64,000 bases of DNA from Fimbriosthenelais zetlandica (GCA_977030845.1 OZ365118.1:23498001-23562000); one strand, 5' to 3'; shown: positions 3,001-26,831, counted from the first letter of the stretch. Made by a program: numbers and translations. Notes: a model not told the origin generated them from the letters alone.

Positions 3001-6000
3001 CAGAACGTTTATAAATCAGAATAGAGACTTGAGAGTCCTACTTAATAATCACTGCCTACATCAGGCACCCACCCCCACCTCCACGCCCCACTCACCAGTA
3101 GCAGGCGTTTCCTTCTCCAGCTCTTGTTGTAGCTGTGTCAGGTAAGACAGTATGGCCAGGCGATCAGAACTCCCGCCACTCGCCAACAGTTCAGCTGACA
3201 ATGTCGCCTCAACACCAAAATGTTCAAAGATCAAATCAAACGCCTGAAAAACAAACAAACACATGTCAACCTGCCATAGCTCTCATGTAACACTGTGATG
3301 TGAGGAGTAAACATTCACTTGTCATTATTATGAGGAGATAGAGTAAATGTTTCTCACTCTTTGAATGTTGTTGACTGCATTATCTGGACTGACATATCGC
3401 ACGTCACTACAAGAACAAAAAGAAAACTCAGTAACAGAAATCTTACTGTAGAAGGCAAACTGAGGTCTGAAATACAAACAAAATACCAACAGAAAGAGGA
3501 CAGAGTAGAGAGTGAGAGCTGTACATACAGGAGTCCTGGACGGTAGAGGTGTAGGAGTGAGAGGAGAGCCAGGCCATTCCTCCACGAGGACGTCAGGTCA
3601 CGTACGTTAATGAGGTTAGATAACGGTTCCAGCCGCTTCTTATACCACTCCAACAGCCGCTTACGGTTCAACGTACCGTCTGTAAGACAAGGAGACGTGA
3701 GAGAAAGTCATAACATAAAACTCATAACATGATCTATTACAGGAGAGAAAGTCATAAAATAAACCTTATAACATGATCTATTGTAGGAGAGAAAGTCATA
3801 ACATAAACCTTATAACATGATCTATTAGAGGAGAGAAACTCATAAAATAAACCTTATGACATGATCTATTAGAGGAGAGAAACTCATAAAATAAACCTTA
3901 TAACATGATCTATTAGAGGAGAGAAGCTCATAAAATAAACCTTATAACATGATCTATTAGAGGAGAGAAACTCATAAAATAAACCTTATAACATGATCTA
4001 TTAGAGGAGAGAAACTCATAAAATAAACCTTATGACATGATCTATTACAGGAGAGAAAGTCATAACATAAACCTTATAACATGATCTATTAGAGGAGAGA
4101 AACTCATAAAATAAACCTTATAACATGATCTATTAGAGGAGAGAAACTCATAAAATAAACCTTATAACATGATCTATTAGAGGAGAGAAACTCATAAAAT
4201 AAACCTTATAACATGATCTATTAGAGGAGAGAAACTCATAAAATAAACCTTATAACATGATCTATTAGAGGAGAGAAGCTCATAAAATAAACCTTATAAC
4301 ATGATCTATTAGAGGAGAGAAACTCATAAAATAAACCTTATAACATGATCTATTAGAGGAGAGAAACTCATAAAATAAACCTTATGACATGATCTATTAG
4401 AGGAGAGAAACTCATAAAATAAACCTTATAACATGATCTATTAGAGGAGAGAAACTCATAAAATAAACCTTATAACATGATCTATTAGAGGAGAGAAACT
4501 CATAAAATAAACCTTATAACATGATCTATTAGAGGAGAGAAACTCATAAAATAAACCTTATAACATGATCTATTACAGGAGAGAAAGTCATAAAATAAAC
4601 CTTATAACATGATCTATTAGAGGAGAGAAACTCATAACATAAACCTTATAACATGATCTATTAGAGGAGAGAAACTCATAACATAAACCTTATAACATGA
4701 TCTATTGTAGGAGACTAGCAGCTGCCGTCTGACTACTCACCGTAAGCTGGGGTACGAGGTTTACGTGGCATGGGTTTAGGTTTAGTCGGGAGAACGGTCG
4801 GCACGCCAAGACCACGATCATACAGATGCTGAACTTGTTCTGAACTCAGCCGCTTGATTCTACCAAACTTAGGGCCATACCTGACATAGTGATAACACAT
4901 GAGAGAGTTAGAGTGATATAGTGATGTAGTAGGCTTATGAGTATTAGAGTGGCATAGTATGATAGTCACAGGATAATGGTGATAATGTGAGGTGTAAGCT
5001 TACCTAGTGCGGGGGTCCAGTGTATACTCTGTCAGTCTCATGTTTAGATTGTCAGGTTTAGTTTGTGACAGTAACTGTAGCACAGCTTCACGTTCAGCAA
5101 TCGCTTCCAGTGGTGAACATTCCCCAGAGAAGAGATTCCTCATCATCCAGGCGGCATCAAAGACGGAGAGGAAACCACGAGCACAGCCTGAACCAGTCGG
5201 CCAGAACGGCTACAACAGACAAACAGCATAGATATACAGAAAAAACACAGCCTGAACCAGTCGGCCAGAACGGCTACAACAGACAAACAGCATAGTTACA
5301 CAGAAAAACCACAGCCTGAACCTGTAGGCCAGAACGGCTACAACAGACAAACAGCATAGTTACACAGAAAATACACAGCCTGAACCAGTCGGCCAGAACG
5401 GCTACAACAGACAAACAGCATAGTTATACAGAAAAAAACACAGCCTGAACCTATAGGCCAGAACGGCTACAACAGACAAACAGCATAGTTACACAGAAAA
5501 AACACAGCCTGAACCTGTAGGCCAGAATGGCTACAACAGACAAACAGCATAGATATATATATATGCAGAGAGCAAATAACAAGAAAGAATACATAAATAT
5601 AGGTAAGATTTATATCAATGTCCACTGCAACGACCAAGAAAGAATACAGAAATGTGAGTGTGTCACCCACGATGGCCTCCACCAGGTGATACAGTGATAC
5701 AGAGTTACAGAGATACAGAGTTAACTCACCTCTATGAGGGTATCACCCACTATAGCCTCCACCAGCTGATACAGAGTTACAGAGTTACAGGAATACAGAG
5801 TTTACTCACCTCTATGAGTGTATCACCCACTATAGCCTCCACCAGCTGCCTCCCCTGACGCTCCTTGATGAGGCACGCATGCTCCGCCTGGTGGAGGTTA
5901 GTAAAATCAAAGATGGCCACGTCTTCTCTGTTCTGATGGTCGCAGGCGAACTGTGGGTCAGCCAGCTGGCCGTCAGTGGACAGGATAGCAGTGTCACGAG

Positions 6001-11190: not shown

Positions 11191-11732
11191 AGATATTCTG
11201 TTATTAAAAAAAGACCCTGGTGGTCAAATCCGCACTTCCGGTGTCATGGCGGCCAGTTACCATATATCCAATGGAAGACAACCAGGAAGCAGCCTAGGTT
11301 GCGCTAGGCTGCATTTGCAGAAAATGTTACTAAAATCGGGCATAAAATCAGGAGTTTCCGGTTTTACGGGTAATTAGATCAACTGTTCAGGCAGGGAGTG
11401 AGAAGTTTTAATGTAGTTCTCTTATTTTCACTTAACTCAAGTTTAATATGTTCAATATTTATAATTAAAACATTACCATTTGTCTAAATATTCAATTTCA
11501 AACTCGCCTTATTTTTATCTATAAATGATTAATTCATTAGTTTGTCAGTAATTCTTTATTATTTAACAATGTCAACATTCGTTTTCCATAATCTTTGGCG
11601 AGCGTCCTGGCTTAGCTATAAGGGATTTAACAATTATTCCGGAATTCAGTAATCGTATAATTATATCACATACATTATATACATTTCGTACAGCGACGAA
11701 AACCTTCATTGAAGAGAGCTGTTTAAAGTTAA

Positions 11733-11784
<52 letters not shown>

Positions 11785-22092: not shown

Positions 22093-22116
22093 TATAAATA
22101 GACTGTGGGATTCCCA
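22093..22116 (+). promoter_or_regulatory. TATA box with an adjacent kB-like site upstream of the TNFR-like gene
   Basis: TATAAATA at 22093-22100, GGGATTCCC at 22107-22115, about 100 bp upstream of ATG 22204. Confidence 0.45.
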
Positions 22117-22203
22117 AGCTGAATGACCCACTCGTCACAGGCCTTACACACGGGATCTCACGAGGAGAGAATGGTGGGCTTCAGTCCAGGCTTCAGTCCA
22201 GGT

Positions 22204-25200
22204 ATGAAGATACTCTGGTCACTCCTGCTGCTGACCATCCGTGTACAGGTGAGCTGAACCTTTAATTACAGGTAGATGTAACAGGTGAGAGGGGTAGAGG
22301 GGTAGAGGCGAGGTAGGAACAAGTTGTGTTTTGTTGTGGGATGGGTAGGTATGAGTGTTGGGGGATGGGCTATAGGTATGAGTGTTGTCGGGGGGATCGG
22401 TAGGGATAATTGATCATATAGTAAATACGCCTCTTCACAAGGTGGTCCTCTAAGCCTATATTGTCTACTGGACTAACTTAGTTGTATAAACCAAGTTATA
22501 TAAGGTCTGACTGGGGACATCTCATGTTAAACTAGTCCGTTATTATAGGTGACTCATCATCACGCTATCTGTGCCAGTTATTAGACACTGATTATTGAGG
22601 CGTATATTACACGGAGGTCTAACTATACACCATATATGGTTCTCTATATATGTACATCATTCATGGTTCTCTCTGTCACCCGCATTATAAAGGCCTGTAA
22701 GGAGCAGTGGTTGACATGTTGTTTCGGGAAGTTTGAGTACATACAGGTTCATGGTAACCTATAATCAGCCAGTATTAGACATGCTGATAAAGGATCTATA
22801 CGCTGATAGCGTGTCCTACATCTGGCTGGCCCGGTAACCTCACCGCGTCATCACCGCGTCCCGTGACGTCATGACAGGGGCATCCCCTGATACAGACGTG
22901 AAAGTGAGGCTGGGGAATTCCCAAATACAAACAGGTGGAAACTATTGACCACTATTCTATGTTTGTACTCTCTTACCCTGATTTGGGTCGTCAGATTCAA
23001 AATAAAACAAAATAAACTTTCAAATTAATTTCATTGATATTTTTTCAGGGGGTGTCGGTGTCGGATGCCATCACAGGGCCTGATTCCTGTACTAGCAAGT
23101 GAGTAACTTGGGTGTTCATGGTCTTATAATAATAATAAAAATAAAAGTGAATAAAGGACTGAGATTTAAGATCTGAACAGCCACACCAGTCTTACTAGCT
23201 CTCTTATCTTTACAGACAATTCTACGATTACAGTGAAGGCAGATGTGAGACGTGTAAAAGTTGTCCTAAAGGTTTGGGACGAAGCAACTTTTACTATAAC
23301 GATGATTGTATTCAATCAAACCCGCAACCCATCAATGGGACCAAACTGTACCTGCACTGTATCCAGACTGTCTCAGTACCAGTATGGCCGCCCATACCGG
23401 TACCGGTCAGATCTACAGGTGGAGCGGGACTGACAGAGCCACCAGGTGAGTGAACACATGCACCAAGCTACCCACCAACACAAACTACCCACCAACACGA
23501 ACTACCCACCAACACAAACTACCCCCCAACACAAACTACCCACCAACACAAGCTACCCACCAACAAGAACTACCCCCCATTCTAACTATCCAACATTCAA
23601 TAAAATACCCACCATTCTAACTATCCAACATTCAATAAACTACCCACCATTCTAACTATCCAACATTCAATAAACTAACTACCCACCATTCATTCATTCA
23701 AACTAATTGTTGTATTTATAGGGAATCACACGACGTCTCCGCCATCAGTGAAACTGTCTAAAGTGGAGACGCTGCCCGCGTCCCACACCCAGACGTACGT
23801 CATGGTGTCTGTGGTGGGGGGATGTCTGACGTTAGTCGTCGTCATGTTAGCTTTATACATATATAGACGGAGGAGGAGACGACCCAGACCTGTAACACCA
23901 GACATAGAGAGTATCCAGCCTGATCCCAGACAACTCTTCACCCTCCATCAGGCTCCCAGTAACCCAGTCAGGCAAGGTGAGTACCCTCCATCATCCCAGC
24001 AACCCAGTCAGGCAAGGTGAGTACCCTCCATCATCCCAGTAACCCAGTCAGGCAAGGTGAGTTGCTACACTCCTGGGTTTAGACTCCAGGTTTAGTTGAC
24101 CTCCTGATTTAGTTTAAGCTCCTGGCTCTTGGTATGGTGTAAACTGCTGATTTGATGGTTGAGCTCCTGATTTGGTGTAAACTTCTTGGTTGAGCTCCTG
24201 ATATGGTTTCTGTTATTGATGATGGTTGAGCTGCTGGTTTTGTCTCTGTCATTTTTGATGTTTTATGTCCAGGTGATGATGTGTATTTTTGTTGTTATTT
24301 TTGATCCAGGTGATGACGTGTTTTTTTATTTTTGATGTATCCAGGTGATGATGTGTTTGTTATTTTTGATGTATCCAGGTGATGATGTGTTTTTTGTTAT
24401 TTTTGATGTATCCAGGTGATGATGTGTTTGTTATTTTTGATCCAGGTGAGGACGTGTCCCTGTCCTGTCTCTGTCATGACACCTCCCTCATCACCTCGTT
24501 CTCTGTCCGCTGGTTCCATCCCGCCACTCAGCGGAATCTCTTTGGTTCTCAGACAGAGATTAAACGTATCCACCGGTTAGACGGGGGGACGTACGACGTC
24601 CACATCCACGGACGCTACGTCAACACTAAACAGTTCACGGTCCAACTGAGTCTGGATGTAGAGGTGGAGACGGGCGGAGAGGCGACAGAACATGCGGCAT
24701 TCACAGCCAGCGCTCTACAACATGGTAAATAGTCATACTATATTCAACACAGATCACATTGACAATAGTCAACACAGATCACAGTTTTCTCTCTCTCGTT
24801 TATCAGCAGCAGGTAATGGTTTGCTTGCGGTCGAGCACGGTCCAGACGCGGTCGAGCATGGATCAGATGCGGTTGAGCACGGTCCAGATGCGGTTGAGCA
24901 CGGAGAGGCGGCTGGGGGGCAGGCCTTGCTTCCCGTAGAGCACGAGGACTCAGTGGAACCGCTGGCCGCACCCGAGATGAACCCGGAGACCGCAGTACCG
25001 CACATCCTGCCCAGCGGAGGTACGTTACTCTACTCCATGTTAATATGTCCATGATAGAAGCCAGCTGTCTGTATAGGCATCATCAGCTGTATGTATAGGT
25101 ATAGGCCTATATTTCACCTCACGTTTCCTTCCATTCATTTCAGCTGAAGCTCCCATGGCTTTGATTATAGCAGCGTATGAAAATCATCTCCCCATGAGCC

Positions 25201-26831
25201 ATCCAGGTCAGTCTTACATTCAGTCTTACTGACATGGTCTTACTGCCATGGTCTGACTCCATGCCCATTGTTGACTTGGTGTTGTAACAGTGAATCATTG
25301 TTGACTTGGTGTTGTAACAGTGAATCATTGTTGACTTGGTGTTGTAACAGTGAATCATTGTTGACTTGGTGTTGTAACAGTGAATCATTGTCGACTTGGT
25401 GTTCTAACAGTGAATCATTGTCGACTTGGTGTTGTAACACTGAATCATTGTCGACTTGGTGTTGTAACAGTGAATCCTGTTTTCAGATAAGGTGTGTAGT
25501 CTGGCGTTGAAGCAGCTTGTAGAGAGGGAGGAGAGTATGGTTCAGCTCGCCATCCTGCTCGACCCCTACAACACGCTGCTGAGGGCATTCGCTCTCTCCA
25601 AGGCCCACATGACCTACCAGGAGATCAAGTTTGTAGAGTAAGTCATTCATGTTAGATTCAGAGTAAGTCATTCATGTTAGATTCAGAGTAAGTCATTCAT
25701 GTTAGATTCAGAGTAAGTCATTCATGTTAGATTCAAAGTGGATCTAAGTCATTCATGTTAGATTCCTACTGACGGGAGGTGGCACCTCCTGGTGGTCATA
25801 TAGCACACCTGATCAGATAACCAGGTACTGTAATATTGGCCATCTTATATAAGGTACACTGCTTGTTACAGGTACTGTACTCGGGGTGAGGGGAATGCTG
25901 TGCGGGGATTCCTGAACTACATCACGGAGGTAAAGAATCAGACGCTGTTTGTGTATGACTTACTTCACTTCATGCTCAGTCATAACTTCCCCAAGACGCG
26001 GGAGACCATCAATATACTATACTACACTCACCAGGACTGCCAGGCCTGCCTCAAGCTGTTCACGTATGTACCACTAACCAGCCTTCATTATCTCATCCCC
26101 GCCATCATTCCTACCCCCCTGTCTACTGTCAGTCATCATTCCTACCCCCTGTCTACCGTCATTACATCATGTGTTATTTGAATCTTGCAGGGATCATTGT
26201 TCACCTAGTAACGTTACAGAGTATCGTTATGTTGTACACTGGCACAGCTCGGTACAGCACCAAGCCTGTACCCAGACACTGTACCACCTCCTCAACATCA
26301 GCAGGCACAGTCTGAGCTTCAGGGAGACTATGAGGGTTCAGCTCGAGCCGACCCCCGACATCTGGCGCGATATCGGCCGGGTGCTGGGCGGATTTACCAA
26401 ATACCTGCTAGATTACATAGAGTAAGTACACAACAATATACATTACAATGTAGACAAGAGCCTCCAGCTGAAAATCATACATCAACTGGAGTAATCAAGA
26501 TTATGAGCTGGTAATCACCCCATAATAATGGCTCTATTTGCTGATTTCTCATGTTGTTGAGTGGGCCTCCTTGTTCATTTGACCGATTTCTCATTTTCTG
26601 TCTTTCAGACATCATTACAGCAGCCCCAGGGGTAATCTGAGCGTGACAGCGTCAGAGAAAGTCCTGGAGATGTTGGCAGCTACCTACCCACACCTCAAGG
26701 TGGCAGCACTGGTCGACTGGCTGGTCGCAAAGAGACACAATAACGTGGTGGATAAAATCTACACATCCCACATAAACTGTCAACACTGTCAAAACATTAG
26801 TCACCCTCTCATGATGCCATCATTTACATAG
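22204..26831 (+). CDS. TNF-receptor-like type I membrane protein (643 aa): signal peptide, Cys-rich module, TM, cytoplasmic Ig-like domain, two death-fold-like domains
   Basis: Exons 22204-22248, 23049-23098, 23216-23445, 23722-23976, 24446-24724, 24807-25019, 25144-25206, 25487-25637, 25872-26063, 26191-26421, 26609-26831 (1932 nt, all phases consistent). MKILWSLLLLTIRVQG signal; CTSKQFYDYSEGRCETCKSCPKG Cys-rich domain; TM VMVSVVGGCLTLVVVMLALYIY followed by RRRRRR; GEDVSLSC...VRWFH...DGGTYDV Ig motif; IWRDIGRVLG...LKVAALVDWL...HNNVVDKI death-like. Confidence 0.8.
22864..22922 (+). promoter_or_regulatory. CRE + kB motif cluster in intron 1 of the TNFR-like gene
   Basis: TGACGTCA 22864-22871, GGGGCATCCCC 22877-22887, perfect palindromic GGGAATTCCC 22913-22922. 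Confidence 0.45.

What the first reader, a model, noticed from the sequence alone, without database searches (positions are those of the whole stretch)
22204..26831. TNF-receptor-like protein with a cytoplasmic Ig domain and two death-fold-like domains, each capped by HxxCxxC
Seen: a phase-consistent 11-exon CDS with signal peptide, one Cys-rich TNFR-type module, a TM helix with a basic stop-transfer, then on the cytoplasmic side an Ig-like domain (C at strand B, W at strand C, D-x-G-x-Y with the second Cys replaced, consistent with no disulfide), an (AVEHGPD)-type linker and two helical domains ending HQDCQAC and HINCQHC. Known: vertebrate TNFRs carry at most one death domain and no intracellular Ig, while death domain plus intracellular Ig is the MALT1 arrangement. 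Inference: a receptor with a built-in adaptor/scaffold module and possibly Zn-stabilised death folds, i.e. a non-canonical invertebrate death-receptor signalling design.
Basis: partly seen in the sequence, partly recalled or inferred. Interest (0 to 1): 0.78.

Follow-up and report, generated by a model that had tools for sequence, protein, structure and literature searches.

The report
Worm death-domain receptor with inner Ig
This reportedly annelid genome holds a single-copy 11-exon gene that most likely encodes a membrane receptor with a small TNF-receptor-like tip outside the cell and, inside, an Ig-like domain, an acidic repeat linker, an unrecognisable helical domain and one genuine death domain; no paper I found describes this arrangement, and no transcript or counterpart in another species could be found.

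Summary
The observation largely holds. All 11 exons have GT-AG borders and join into one open 643-codon frame. It encodes a signal peptide, one Cys-rich module, a single transmembrane helix with an RRRRRR stop-transfer, an Ig-like exon, four AVEHGPD-type repeats and two helical segments ending HQDCQAC and HINCQHC.

- **Second helical segment:** it is a real death domain. It scores 18.4 bits against a profile of 30 death domains from this genome, and none of 2000 shuffles reached that. hhalign gives 92%, and it is 33% identical to a Pfam-positive death domain elsewhere in the genome.
- **First helical segment:** it matches neither the death-domain profile nor the CARD profile. It resembles the second segment only weakly, but it shares the same intron position, the same phase and the same end motif.
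- **Ig-like exon:** three weak lines of evidence agree that it is Ig-like.
- **TNFR-like module:** only its first two thirds fit the TNFR family.
- **Missing evidence:** no sequencing run was listed and no relative of exon 5 turned up among 1.84 billion proteins, so neither the one-gene model nor conservation is proven. Zinc binding is speculation.

I rate it a new variant of a known kind (invertebrate death-domain receptors) and of moderate interest. The spliced protein could not be handed to Pfam or AlphaFold because it has no reference.

The parts
22093..22115 (+). TATA-like box (TATAAATAG, 22093-22101) and a 9-base kappaB-like GGGATTCCC (22107-22115), about 60-110 bases upstream of the start codons
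   Evidence: Read directly. Function is not tested; the 10-base kappaB consensus is not met here.
22171..22248 (+). Exon 1: signal peptide. An in-frame upstream ATG at 22171 would add 11 residues.
   Evidence: The hydrophobic core is LWSLLLLTI, and the donor is GTGAGC.
23049..23098 (+). Exon 2: start of the mature ectodomain, with the first Cys of the Cys-rich module
23216..23445 (+). Exon 3: the rest of the single Cys-rich module (C-x12-C-x2-C-x2-C, then C-x17-C with non-canonical spacing) and a Pro-rich stalk
   Evidence: Pfam TNFR_c6 E 0.063, 14.1 bits, profile positions 5-26 of 39. The own-genome CRD profile gives 16.5 bits over positions 1-26, with 0 of 2000 shuffles reaching it.
23722..23976 (+). 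Exon 4: stalk, the only TM helix (aa 134-156, bases 23796-23864), the RRRRRRPRP stop-transfer and the juxtamembrane segment. It is a phase 1-1 exon.
   Evidence: Kyte-Doolittle windows above 1.6 occur only at aa 131-139. Pfam gives weak TM-juxtamembrane hits. The donor lies in a 40-base repeat of 3 copies.
24446..24724 (+). Exon 5: Ig-like beta-sandwich domain on a single phase 1-1 exon. It has the strand-B Cys and the strand-C Trp; in D-G-G-T-Y-D-V the second Cys is replaced by Val.
   Evidence: It has no sequence relative among 1.84 billion representatives and is single copy in this genome.
24807..25019 (+). Exon 6: acidic, His-, Gly- and Ala-rich linker holding the four AVEHGPD-type repeats (21-base coding repeat at 24826-24903). 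It is a phase 1-1 exon with three NAGNAG-type acceptors.
   Evidence: 14 D+E, 0 K+R and 6 H in 71 residues.
25144..25206 (+). Exon 7: a 21-residue phase 1-1 exon leading into the first helical domain
25487..26063 (+). Exons 8 (25487-25637) and 9 (25872-26063): the first helical domain (aa ~392-488), a candidate degenerate death fold. It ends in HQDCQAC (26029-26049), followed after six residues by H-C in exon 10.
   Evidence: No signal against the Death or CARD profiles. Global alignment to the second domain gives z 5.6 with the motif and z 3.2 without it. The intron sits at the same aligned place in the same phase 2. The exon 9 model has three helices, pLDDT 56.
26191..26831 (+). Exons 10 (26191-26421) and 11 (26609-26831, including the stop). 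They encode a His/Cys-rich lead-in and then a genuine death domain (aa 544-621; bases 26342-26421 and 26609-26762). The domain ends in HINCQHC (26769-26789), followed by x4-H.
   Evidence: Own-genome Death profile: 18.4 bits, 0 of 2000 shuffles. hhalign: probability 92.3%, E 5.5e-7. 33% identity over 84 residues to the death domain at G000:C29:5977141-5977386, which Pfam calls Death at E 6.9e-8.
27808..27844 (+). The first two AATAAA signals on the + strand after the stop codon, implying a 3' UTR of about 1 kb. There is none on the + strand in intron 4 (23977-24445).

Best explanation
I read this as one single-copy gene for a lineage-restricted type I membrane receptor of the invertebrate death-domain-receptor kind.

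Outside the cell it carries one small TNFR-type cysteine module with the CxxCxxC signature, on a Pro-rich glycosylated stalk. Inside it carries, in order:
- an Ig-like beta-sandwich that has lost its disulfide;
- a flexible acidic His-rich repeat linker;
- a strongly diverged copy of the death-domain unit;
- a C-terminal death domain.

Proposed mechanism (inferred): ligand-driven clustering of the ectodomains brings the terminal death domains together. These then seed a homotypic death-domain assembly with cytosolic adaptors. Annelids have FADD and DED-caspases (PMC11463336). The diverged first unit and the Ig-like domain would act as a built-in spacer, partner or lock for the signalling domain, as the UPA domain does for the UNC5 death domain.

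The symmetrical phase 1-1 exons 4-7 suggest that the Ig and linker exons entered the tail by exon shuffling. The shared intron position and phase suggest that the two helical units arose by tandem duplication of a two-exon unit.

Shown: the gene structure, the single TM span, the partial CRD, the Ig-likeness and the identity of the second death domain. Inferred: that one transcript carries all exons, the topology, the fold of the first unit, the partners, and any metal binding by the H-x2-C-x2-C caps.
For: - Gene structure: an open 643-codon chain over 11 canonical GT-AG exons. Intron 4 is only 469 bases long, is made of tandem repeats, and has no AATAAA on the + strand. Phases match across it.
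- Membrane topology: one hydrophobic span only, followed by six Arg. The two N-x-T sequons that precede it are on the ectodomain side.
- CRD.
- Ig-like domain. The strand-F Cys is missing, which fits a reducing compartment.
- Death domain.
- Duplication of the helical unit: global alignment z 5.6, with 0 of 5000 shuffles reaching it, or z 3.2 (16 of 5000) without the motif. Both units are split in phase 2 at the aligned VE|Y and IE|H. H-x2-C-x2-C follows neither of the two domains' 30 best-scoring relatives in this genome.
- Background: single-CRD TNFR-type receptors are expanded in annelids, and some invertebrate ones carry death domains. This genome also has canonical CRD-plus-death-domain loci and a gene with two tandem canonical death domains.
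Against: - No transcript evidence of any kind; no run was listed.
- No relative of exon 5 in 1.84 billion representatives, none of exon 11 in the word-indexed search, and no paralogue in this genome. Conservation, and hence function, is therefore unproven.
- The first helical unit has no significant likeness to any death-fold profile. Its local alignment to the second unit is not significant (z 1.8).
- The boundaries used for the significant global test were chosen after looking at the sequences.
- The CRD is below Pfam's threshold and its second half has odd spacing.
- The Ig model is single-sequence and of middling confidence (pLDDT 69; Foldseek E about 0.01; VIA Z at most 7.5, which is within the range of common arrangements).
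Confidence: 0.55

Rival explanations
1. These are two neighbouring genes read as one. Exons 1-4 would be a short-tailed single-CRD receptor, with a stop 14 codons into retained intron 4. Exons 5-11 would be a separate cytosolic Ig-linker-helical-death-domain adaptor, starting at one of the in-frame ATGs in the repeat just upstream of exon 5 (ORF 24379-24732).
For: The ORF that contains exon 5 opens upstream with in-frame ATG ATG at 24382-24387. Reading through the exon 4 donor ends in a stop after 14 codons (ORF 23748-24020). Short-tailed single-CRD receptors such as Wengen and Grindelwald exist. No transcript joins the halves.
Against: Intron 4 is 469 bases of tandem repeats with no TATA-like box. 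It has no AATAAA on the + strand to end an upstream gene. The exon 4 donor (AAG|GTGAGT) and the exon 5 acceptor (pyrimidine tract plus CAG) are both strong, and their phases match. The upstream ATGs lie inside copies of a repeat that duplicates the acceptor, so they look like a by-product of that repeat.
Confidence: 0.17
2. This is a young, lineage-specific chimeric locus made by exon shuffling, with little or no function. It may be unexpressed or decaying, and its open frame is simply not yet broken.
For: It is single copy with no detectable relative anywhere. The first helical unit is degenerate. Minisatellite duplications straddle several splice sites and the stop codon, which is a sign of an unstable locus. 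The 1-1 phase exons are typical of shuffled modules.
Against: 643 codons without a stop across 11 exons, with ten good splice-site pairs, are unlikely to persist without selection. The death domain keeps the family's core pattern. The blanks on relatives are weak evidence, because eukaryote genomes cannot be searched here and one search is length-limited.
Confidence: 0.15
3. This is one gene, but the first helical segment is not a death fold. It would be a different helical, possibly metal-binding, module that shares only the H-x2-C-x2-C ending with the death domain. The protein would then have the ordinary single death domain.
For: There is no profile signal for Death or CARD. The local alignment to the second unit is not significant. 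Pfam finds nothing on exons 8 and 9. His is enriched 2.7-fold in this region.
Against: Collinear global likeness to the second unit. Same intron place and phase. Exon 9 is predicted as three helices of lengths that match helices 4-6 of a death domain, though at low confidence.
Confidence: 0.13

Closest known systems
Death-domain TNF receptors of the p75NTR/PITA type (several CRDs, TM, one cytoplasmic death domain), found across bilaterians including annelids
   Same: Type I topology, a TNFR-type cysteine module outside the cell and a C-terminal death domain inside. This genome has canonical examples, for instance four CRDs at C29:11139839-11140288 with a death-domain exon 3 kb downstream (for the family).
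   Different: Here there is only one partial CRD. An Ig-like domain, a repeat linker and an extra helical unit lie between the membrane and the death domain. The His/Cys caps are also absent from the canonical type.
Single-CRD invertebrate TNF receptors (Grindelwald and Wengen types), expanded in annelids; some cnidarian members carry a death domain
   Same: A single small CRD with a CxxCxxC signature, a type I membrane protein, and in some members an intracellular death domain.
   Different: None of the described members is reported with a cytoplasmic Ig-like domain or a second helical unit.
MALT1 (paracaspase): death domain, two Ig-like domains, caspase-like domain, a third Ig-like domain; cytosolic
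   Same: A death domain and disulfide-free Ig-like domains together in the cytoplasm (from general knowledge).
   Different: MALT1 has no membrane anchor. The order is reversed (death domain first), and it has a caspase-like domain, which is absent here (Pfam finds nothing). The resemblance is by analogy and there is no evidence of kinship.
ZU5-UPA-death-domain supramodule of UNC5, PIDD and ankyrins
   Same: A beta-sandwich domain placed before a C-terminal death domain in a receptor tail, where it holds the death domain in a closed state (from general knowledge). This is a possible model for how the Ig-like domain could work.
   Different: There is no ZU5 domain. The exon 5 model matches classical Ig domains, and UPA does not appear among the listed matches. 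A long disordered linker separates the beta-sandwich from the helical units.
Tandem death-fold modules (tandem DEDs of caspase-8 and FLIP, tandem CARDs of RIG-I-like receptors; in this genome a gene with two canonical death-domain exons at C29:5977141-5977982)
   Same: Two death-fold-type units in a row. The second unit here is most like the second death domain of the C29 gene (33% identity).
   Different: The first unit here is not recognisable as a death fold. Both units carry an H-x2-C-x2-C ending that the C29 gene and the other best death domains of the genome lack.

Membership tests
TNF receptor superfamily (Pfam TNFR_c6, PF00020) | A cysteine-rich domain matching the family profile above its curated threshold, with six Cys in canonical spacing | tested here: inconclusive
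   Exon 3 scores 14.1 bits against a cut-off of 29.4, covering profile positions 5-26 of 39. The spliced ectodomain scores 16.5-17.5 bits against a profile of 7 CRDs from this genome, over positions 1-26 only. None of 2000 shuffles reached that, but the best shuffle got 15.5. The C4-C5-C6 spacing (x14, x17) is not canonical.
TNF receptor superfamily | Type I membrane topology: signal peptide, ectodomain, single TM span | tested here: met
   Hydrophobic N-terminus, one hydrophobic span at aa 134-156 followed by RRRRRR, and two N-x-T sequons before it.
TNF receptor superfamily | Binds a trimeric TNF-family ligand | not testable with these tools
   It needs the ligands of this species and a binding assay.
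Death domain (Pfam Death, PF00531): second helical unit, aa 544-621 | Significant match to the family profile over most of the domain | tested here: met
   Profile of 30 Pfam-detected death domains from this genome: 18.4 bits, 0 of 2000 shuffles. hhalign: probability 92.3% over 83 columns. BLASTP: E 5e-6 to a Pfam-positive death domain. Pfam's own model was tried only on the separate exons, where it found nothing.
Death domain: second helical unit | Six-helix Greek-key bundle | not tested
   The domain is split over exons 10 and 11, and the spliced sequence has no reference to hand to the structure tool.
Death-fold superfamily: first helical unit, aa ~392-488 | Significant match to a death-fold profile (Death or CARD) | tested here: not met
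   -0.8 bits against the Death profile, with 656 of 2000 shuffles as good. hhalign probability is 0.2% against Death and 0.3% against CARD. DED and PYD were not tested.
Death-fold superfamily: first helical unit | Homology to a proven death domain (the second unit) by alignment and gene structure | tested here: inconclusive
   Global alignment gives z 5.6, or z 3.2 without the end motif, with boundaries chosen after inspection. Local alignment gives z 1.8. The intron position and phase are the same, and exon 9 is predicted as three helices at pLDDT 56.
Immunoglobulin superfamily: exon 5 | Ig-type beta-sandwich recognised by profile, fold or feature search | tested here: met
   V-set hit of 14.4 bits on strands E-F, below the cut-off of 26. 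The all-beta model has pLDDT 69. Foldseek's 50 best hits are nearly all Ig domains, at E about 0.01 and TM about 0.5. VIA's best Z is 7.5, mostly Ig. All of the ten best Atlas feature hits that carry a Pfam family are Ig families, at about 0.91-0.92 with recognition 2703. Each line is weak; together they agree.
Immunoglobulin superfamily: exon 5 | Conserved Cys(B)-Trp(C)-Cys(F) core with the intradomain disulfide | tested here: not met
   The strand-B Cys and strand-C Trp are present. The strand-F position reads Y-D-V, with Val in place of Cys. This is common in intracellular Ig domains.
MALT1-type paracaspase | Caspase-like protease domain next to the death and Ig domains | tested here: not met
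   No such exon exists in the chain, and Pfam finds no peptidase family on any exon.
ZU5-UPA-death-domain supramodule | ZU5 domain preceding the beta-sandwich and death domain | tested here: not met
   No ZU5 hit on any exon. Only a 37-residue juxtamembrane stretch lies between the TM helix and the Ig-like exon.
Structural zinc site (His/Cys cap) | Four ligands in binding geometry, conserved in relatives, with metal found in the protein | not testable with these tools
   Candidate ligands exist: H482, C485, C488 plus H495/C496 or C382; and H624, C627, C630 plus H635 or C519. There is no model of the whole domains, there are no relatives, and no chemistry was possible.

The most novel reading that the evidence does not exclude
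The tail is a self-contained signalling scaffold of a kind not described before. It would be a tandem of two death-type folds, each pinned by a His-Cys-Cys(-His/Cys) zinc site at the end of helix 6, coupled to a disulfide-free cytoplasmic Ig domain. The receptor would then carry its own adaptor and respond to metal or redox state as well as to ligand.
Probability: 0.12. Interest if true: 0.7.

Novelty: new variant of a known kind. Interest (0 to 1): 0.42.

Why it matters
Death-domain receptors outside vertebrates and flies are poorly known, and how extrinsic cell-death and NF-kappaB-type signals are wired in annelids is an open question. A receptor whose tail combines an Ig-like domain, a degenerate death-type unit and a true death domain would be another example of how freely these modules are recombined in invertebrate immunity. 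It would also offer a natural case for asking what a second, degenerate death fold and a cytoplasmic Ig domain do to death-domain assembly. If the His/Cys caps bind zinc, that would be a new way of stabilising or regulating a death fold. As things stand the gene is a single-species orphan without expression data, so its weight is limited.

Tried and rejected
- **Pfam on each exon separately.** It gave only sub-threshold TNFR_c6 and V-set hits and nothing on exons 8-11. This is expected for domains split by introns.
- **Pfam Death model over the whole genome.** It found 71 matches, none in this gene.
- **phmmer of exon 5 against 1.84 billion representatives.** The 9 hits are bacterial or phage repeat proteins that match a short G-G-T-x-x-V-x-x-x-G-R-Y stretch many times. 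I rejected them as spurious.
- **Word-indexed search with exon 11.** No candidate. The blank means little because of the length window.
- **PDB sequence searches.** Exon 11 and the related death domain L021 gave nothing useful.
- **Atlas feature search.** Exon 9 gave no usable hit. As a control, exon 11, which is half of the proven death domain, also gave only meaningless hits. The exon 9 blank is therefore uninformative.
- **BLASTP and MAFFT of exon 9 against exon 11.** No local alignment.
- **Genome-wide pattern for Y-[ST]-H-x2-C-Q-x-C.** 12 hits. This fits the roughly 7 I estimated by hand from base frequencies, but is more than the 3 hits of the tool's control pattern. None is in a death-domain-like frame, so no paralogue was found.
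- **Complex prediction with the exon 8 and exon 9 peptides as two chains.** No answer (score 0.00, chains poorly folded). This is not evidence either way.
- **Sequencing runs.** Two calls found the service busy and two listed no runs, so read laying could not be used.
- **kappaB-type sites.** Not enriched in the window.
- **Left out.** Pfam, PDB and AlphaFold runs on the spliced protein or on whole spliced domains were not done. 


Full report
**What is in the sequence**

Between 22204 and 26831 on the + strand I rebuilt the exon chain from the raw bases. Eleven exons, all with AG acceptors preceded by pyrimidine tracts and GT donors of the GTRAGT type, join into one frame of 643 codons ending in TAG at 26829-26831.

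- The only ambiguities are in-frame alternative acceptors at exon 6 (24807, 24810, 24813), exon 7 (25144 or 25150) and exon 11 (26609 or 26621). All 12 combinations stay open.
- Exons 4, 5, 6 and 7 all begin and end in phase 1, the classic signature of shuffled modules.
- The two helical units are each split by a phase 2 intron.

**Domain by domain**

*Signal peptide, stalk and membrane span.* The N-terminus is a signal-peptide-like hydrophobic stretch. The only hydrophobic span strong enough for a membrane helix is aa 134-156. Six arginines follow it, and two N-x-T sequons precede it.

*Cysteine module.* The module is C-x12-C-x2-C-x2-C-x14-C-x17-C.
- Pfam TNFR_c6 scores 14.1 bits on exon 3, against a cut-off of 29.4.
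- A profile I built from seven Pfam-positive CRDs of this same genome scores 16.5-17.5 bits against the spliced ectodomain.
- That match covers only the first 26 of 39 positions. None of 2000 composition-preserving shuffles reached it, though the best came close at 15.5.
- I therefore call it a partial TNFR-type module and not a proven one. Its CxxCxxC core is the signature noted for ligand-binding CRDs of invertebrate TNF receptors.

*Exon 5 (92 residues).* It is Ig-like by three independent but individually weak lines of evidence.
- A V-set hit on the D-G-G-T-Y region.
- A single-sequence AlphaFold2 model that is all-beta with six long strands, pLDDT 69. Its Foldseek hits are almost all Ig domains, led by an Ig domain of myosin-binding protein C, at E about 0.01 and TM about 0.5. 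Its VIA matches reach Z 7.5.
- ESM-Atlas feature hits that are all Ig families, at 0.92 with recognition 2703.

The second core Cys is replaced by Val. That fits a domain sitting in the cytoplasm.

*Exon 6.* It is an acidic linker with no basic residue. It holds the four AVEHGPD-type repeats, encoded by a 21-base tandem repeat.

**The two helical units**

Pfam sees nothing on the separate exons. I therefore collected 30 death-domain exons that Pfam's Death model finds in this genome, built a profile from them, and searched the spliced protein in a script.

The second unit (aa 544-621) is a death domain.
- It scores 18.4 bits, and none of 2000 shuffles exceeded 9.9.
- hhalign gives 92.3% probability over 83 columns.
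- It is 33% identical over 84 residues (E 5e-6) to the death domain at C29:5977141-5977386, which Pfam itself calls Death at E 6.9e-8.
- That C29 locus has two canonical death-domain exons in tandem.

The first unit (aa ~392-488) gives no signal.
- It scores -0.8 bits against the Death profile.
- hhalign gives 0.2% against Death and 0.3% against a CARD profile built the same way.

Its only link to the death fold is through the second unit.
- A collinear global alignment gives z 5.6 (0 of 5000 shuffles). Without the terminal motif it gives z 3.2 (16 of 5000). I chose the boundaries after inspecting the sequences.
- A plain local alignment is not significant (z 1.8).
- Both units are interrupted at the aligned VE|Y and IE|H by a phase 2 intron.
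- Both end in [YT]-[TS]-H-x2-C-Q-x-C, a motif that follows none of the other 30 death domains.
- Exon 9 alone is predicted as three helices, at low confidence.

My reading is that the first unit is a strongly diverged duplicate of the death-domain unit, with about two-in-three odds. Its fold was not shown.

**The His/Cys caps**

The motifs are real: H482-C485-C488, then H495-C496; and H624-C627-H629-C630, then H635. His is 2.7-fold enriched in this region compared with the genome's other death domains (p = 7e-5). Nothing further supports zinc binding.

**One gene or two, and is it used**

No public run could be listed for this stretch, so there is no transcript evidence.

In favour of one gene:
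- Intron 4 is short (469 bases), made of tandem repeats, and lacks a + strand AATAAA.
- The splice sites on both sides are strong and in matching phase.
- A TATA-like box lies about 70-110 bases upstream of the start codons, and the first poly(A) signals lie about 1 kb after the stop.

Against:
- In-frame ATGs just upstream of exon 5 leave room for a separate Ig-helical-death-domain adaptor gene.

Every exon I tested is single copy in the 447-Mb assembly. Exon 5 has no true relative among 1.84 billion representative proteins. Either the gene is lineage-restricted and fast-evolving, or this species and its close kin are missing from the library. Notes from other windows call the genome annelid; I did not test that.

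**Comparison with what is known**

- Death-domain TNF receptors of the p75NTR/PITA type occur across bilaterians, annelids included.
- Single-CRD Grindelwald-type receptors are most expanded in annelids, and some invertebrate ones carry death domains.
- Annelids have FADD and DED-caspases.
- The receptor-plus-death-domain core is therefore a known kind.
- What I found described nowhere is an Ig-like domain on the cytoplasmic side of such a receptor, a second degenerate unit before the death domain, and the His/Cys caps (literal full-text searches only).
- MALT1 and the ZU5-UPA-death-domain module are functional analogies. This protein is not a member of either family, because the caspase-like domain and the ZU5 domain are both absent.

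**Verdict**

I rate the finding a new variant of a known kind and of moderate interest. It is held back by three gaps: no expression data, no relatives, and no fold evidence for the first unit. The decisive computations need the spliced protein, which could not be handed to the tools here because it has no reference.

Noticed in passing
window 23940-24062, 24252-24441, 25635-25739, 26823-26894: Minisatellite duplications sit exactly on splice sites and on the stop codon. There are three copies of a 40-base unit holding the exon 4 donor, about five copies of a 34-base unit holding the exon 5 acceptor-like CCAG|GTGA, four copies of a 25-base unit holding the exon 8 donor, and two copies of a 35-base unit across the TAG. 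The extra donors would shift the frame, so they could create or disturb alternative splicing.
   Followed up: partly
window 22877-22922 (intron 1) and 22107-22115: All four matches to the kappaB consensus GGGRNWYYCC in the 64-kb window lie within 46 bases of intron 1 of this gene, including the palindrome GGGAATTCCC. A 9-base GGGATTCCC also sits just after the TATA-like box. The window as a whole is not enriched (4 found, about 10 expected), so this is only a lead for NF-kappaB control.
   Followed up: partly
L015 and L021 (G000:C29:5977141-5977982, minus strand): A gene with two canonical death-domain exons in tandem, about 350 bases apart, followed by a Pro-rich exon. Its second death domain is the closest relative of the death domain in the finding (33% identity). 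Its upstream exons were not identified.
   Followed up: partly
G000:C29:11139839-11143608 and G000:C25:26658455-26669447: Two canonical-looking TNF-receptor loci. One has four consecutive TNFR_c6 modules in a single 185-codon open frame, with a death-domain half-exon 3 kb downstream. The other has a CRD exon with a death-domain half-exon about 11 kb away. Several death domains of this genome seem to be split near Pfam position 37-44, about where the finding's units are split.
   Followed up: no
window 22171-22203: An in-frame upstream ATG in a good context (A at -3, G at +4), inside a 12-base tandem repeat. It would extend the signal peptide by 11 residues.
   Followed up: no
window 3846-4599 and 11731-11780: AATAAA occurs 133 times in the window against about 30 expected. 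The excess comes mostly from a 44-base-period array and an AATA microsatellite. Poly(A)-signal counts in this window are therefore inflated by repeats.
   Followed up: no
window about 29150-29440: A run of N (665 N in the window) lies among Pro/Gly-rich low-complexity repeats.
   Followed up: no
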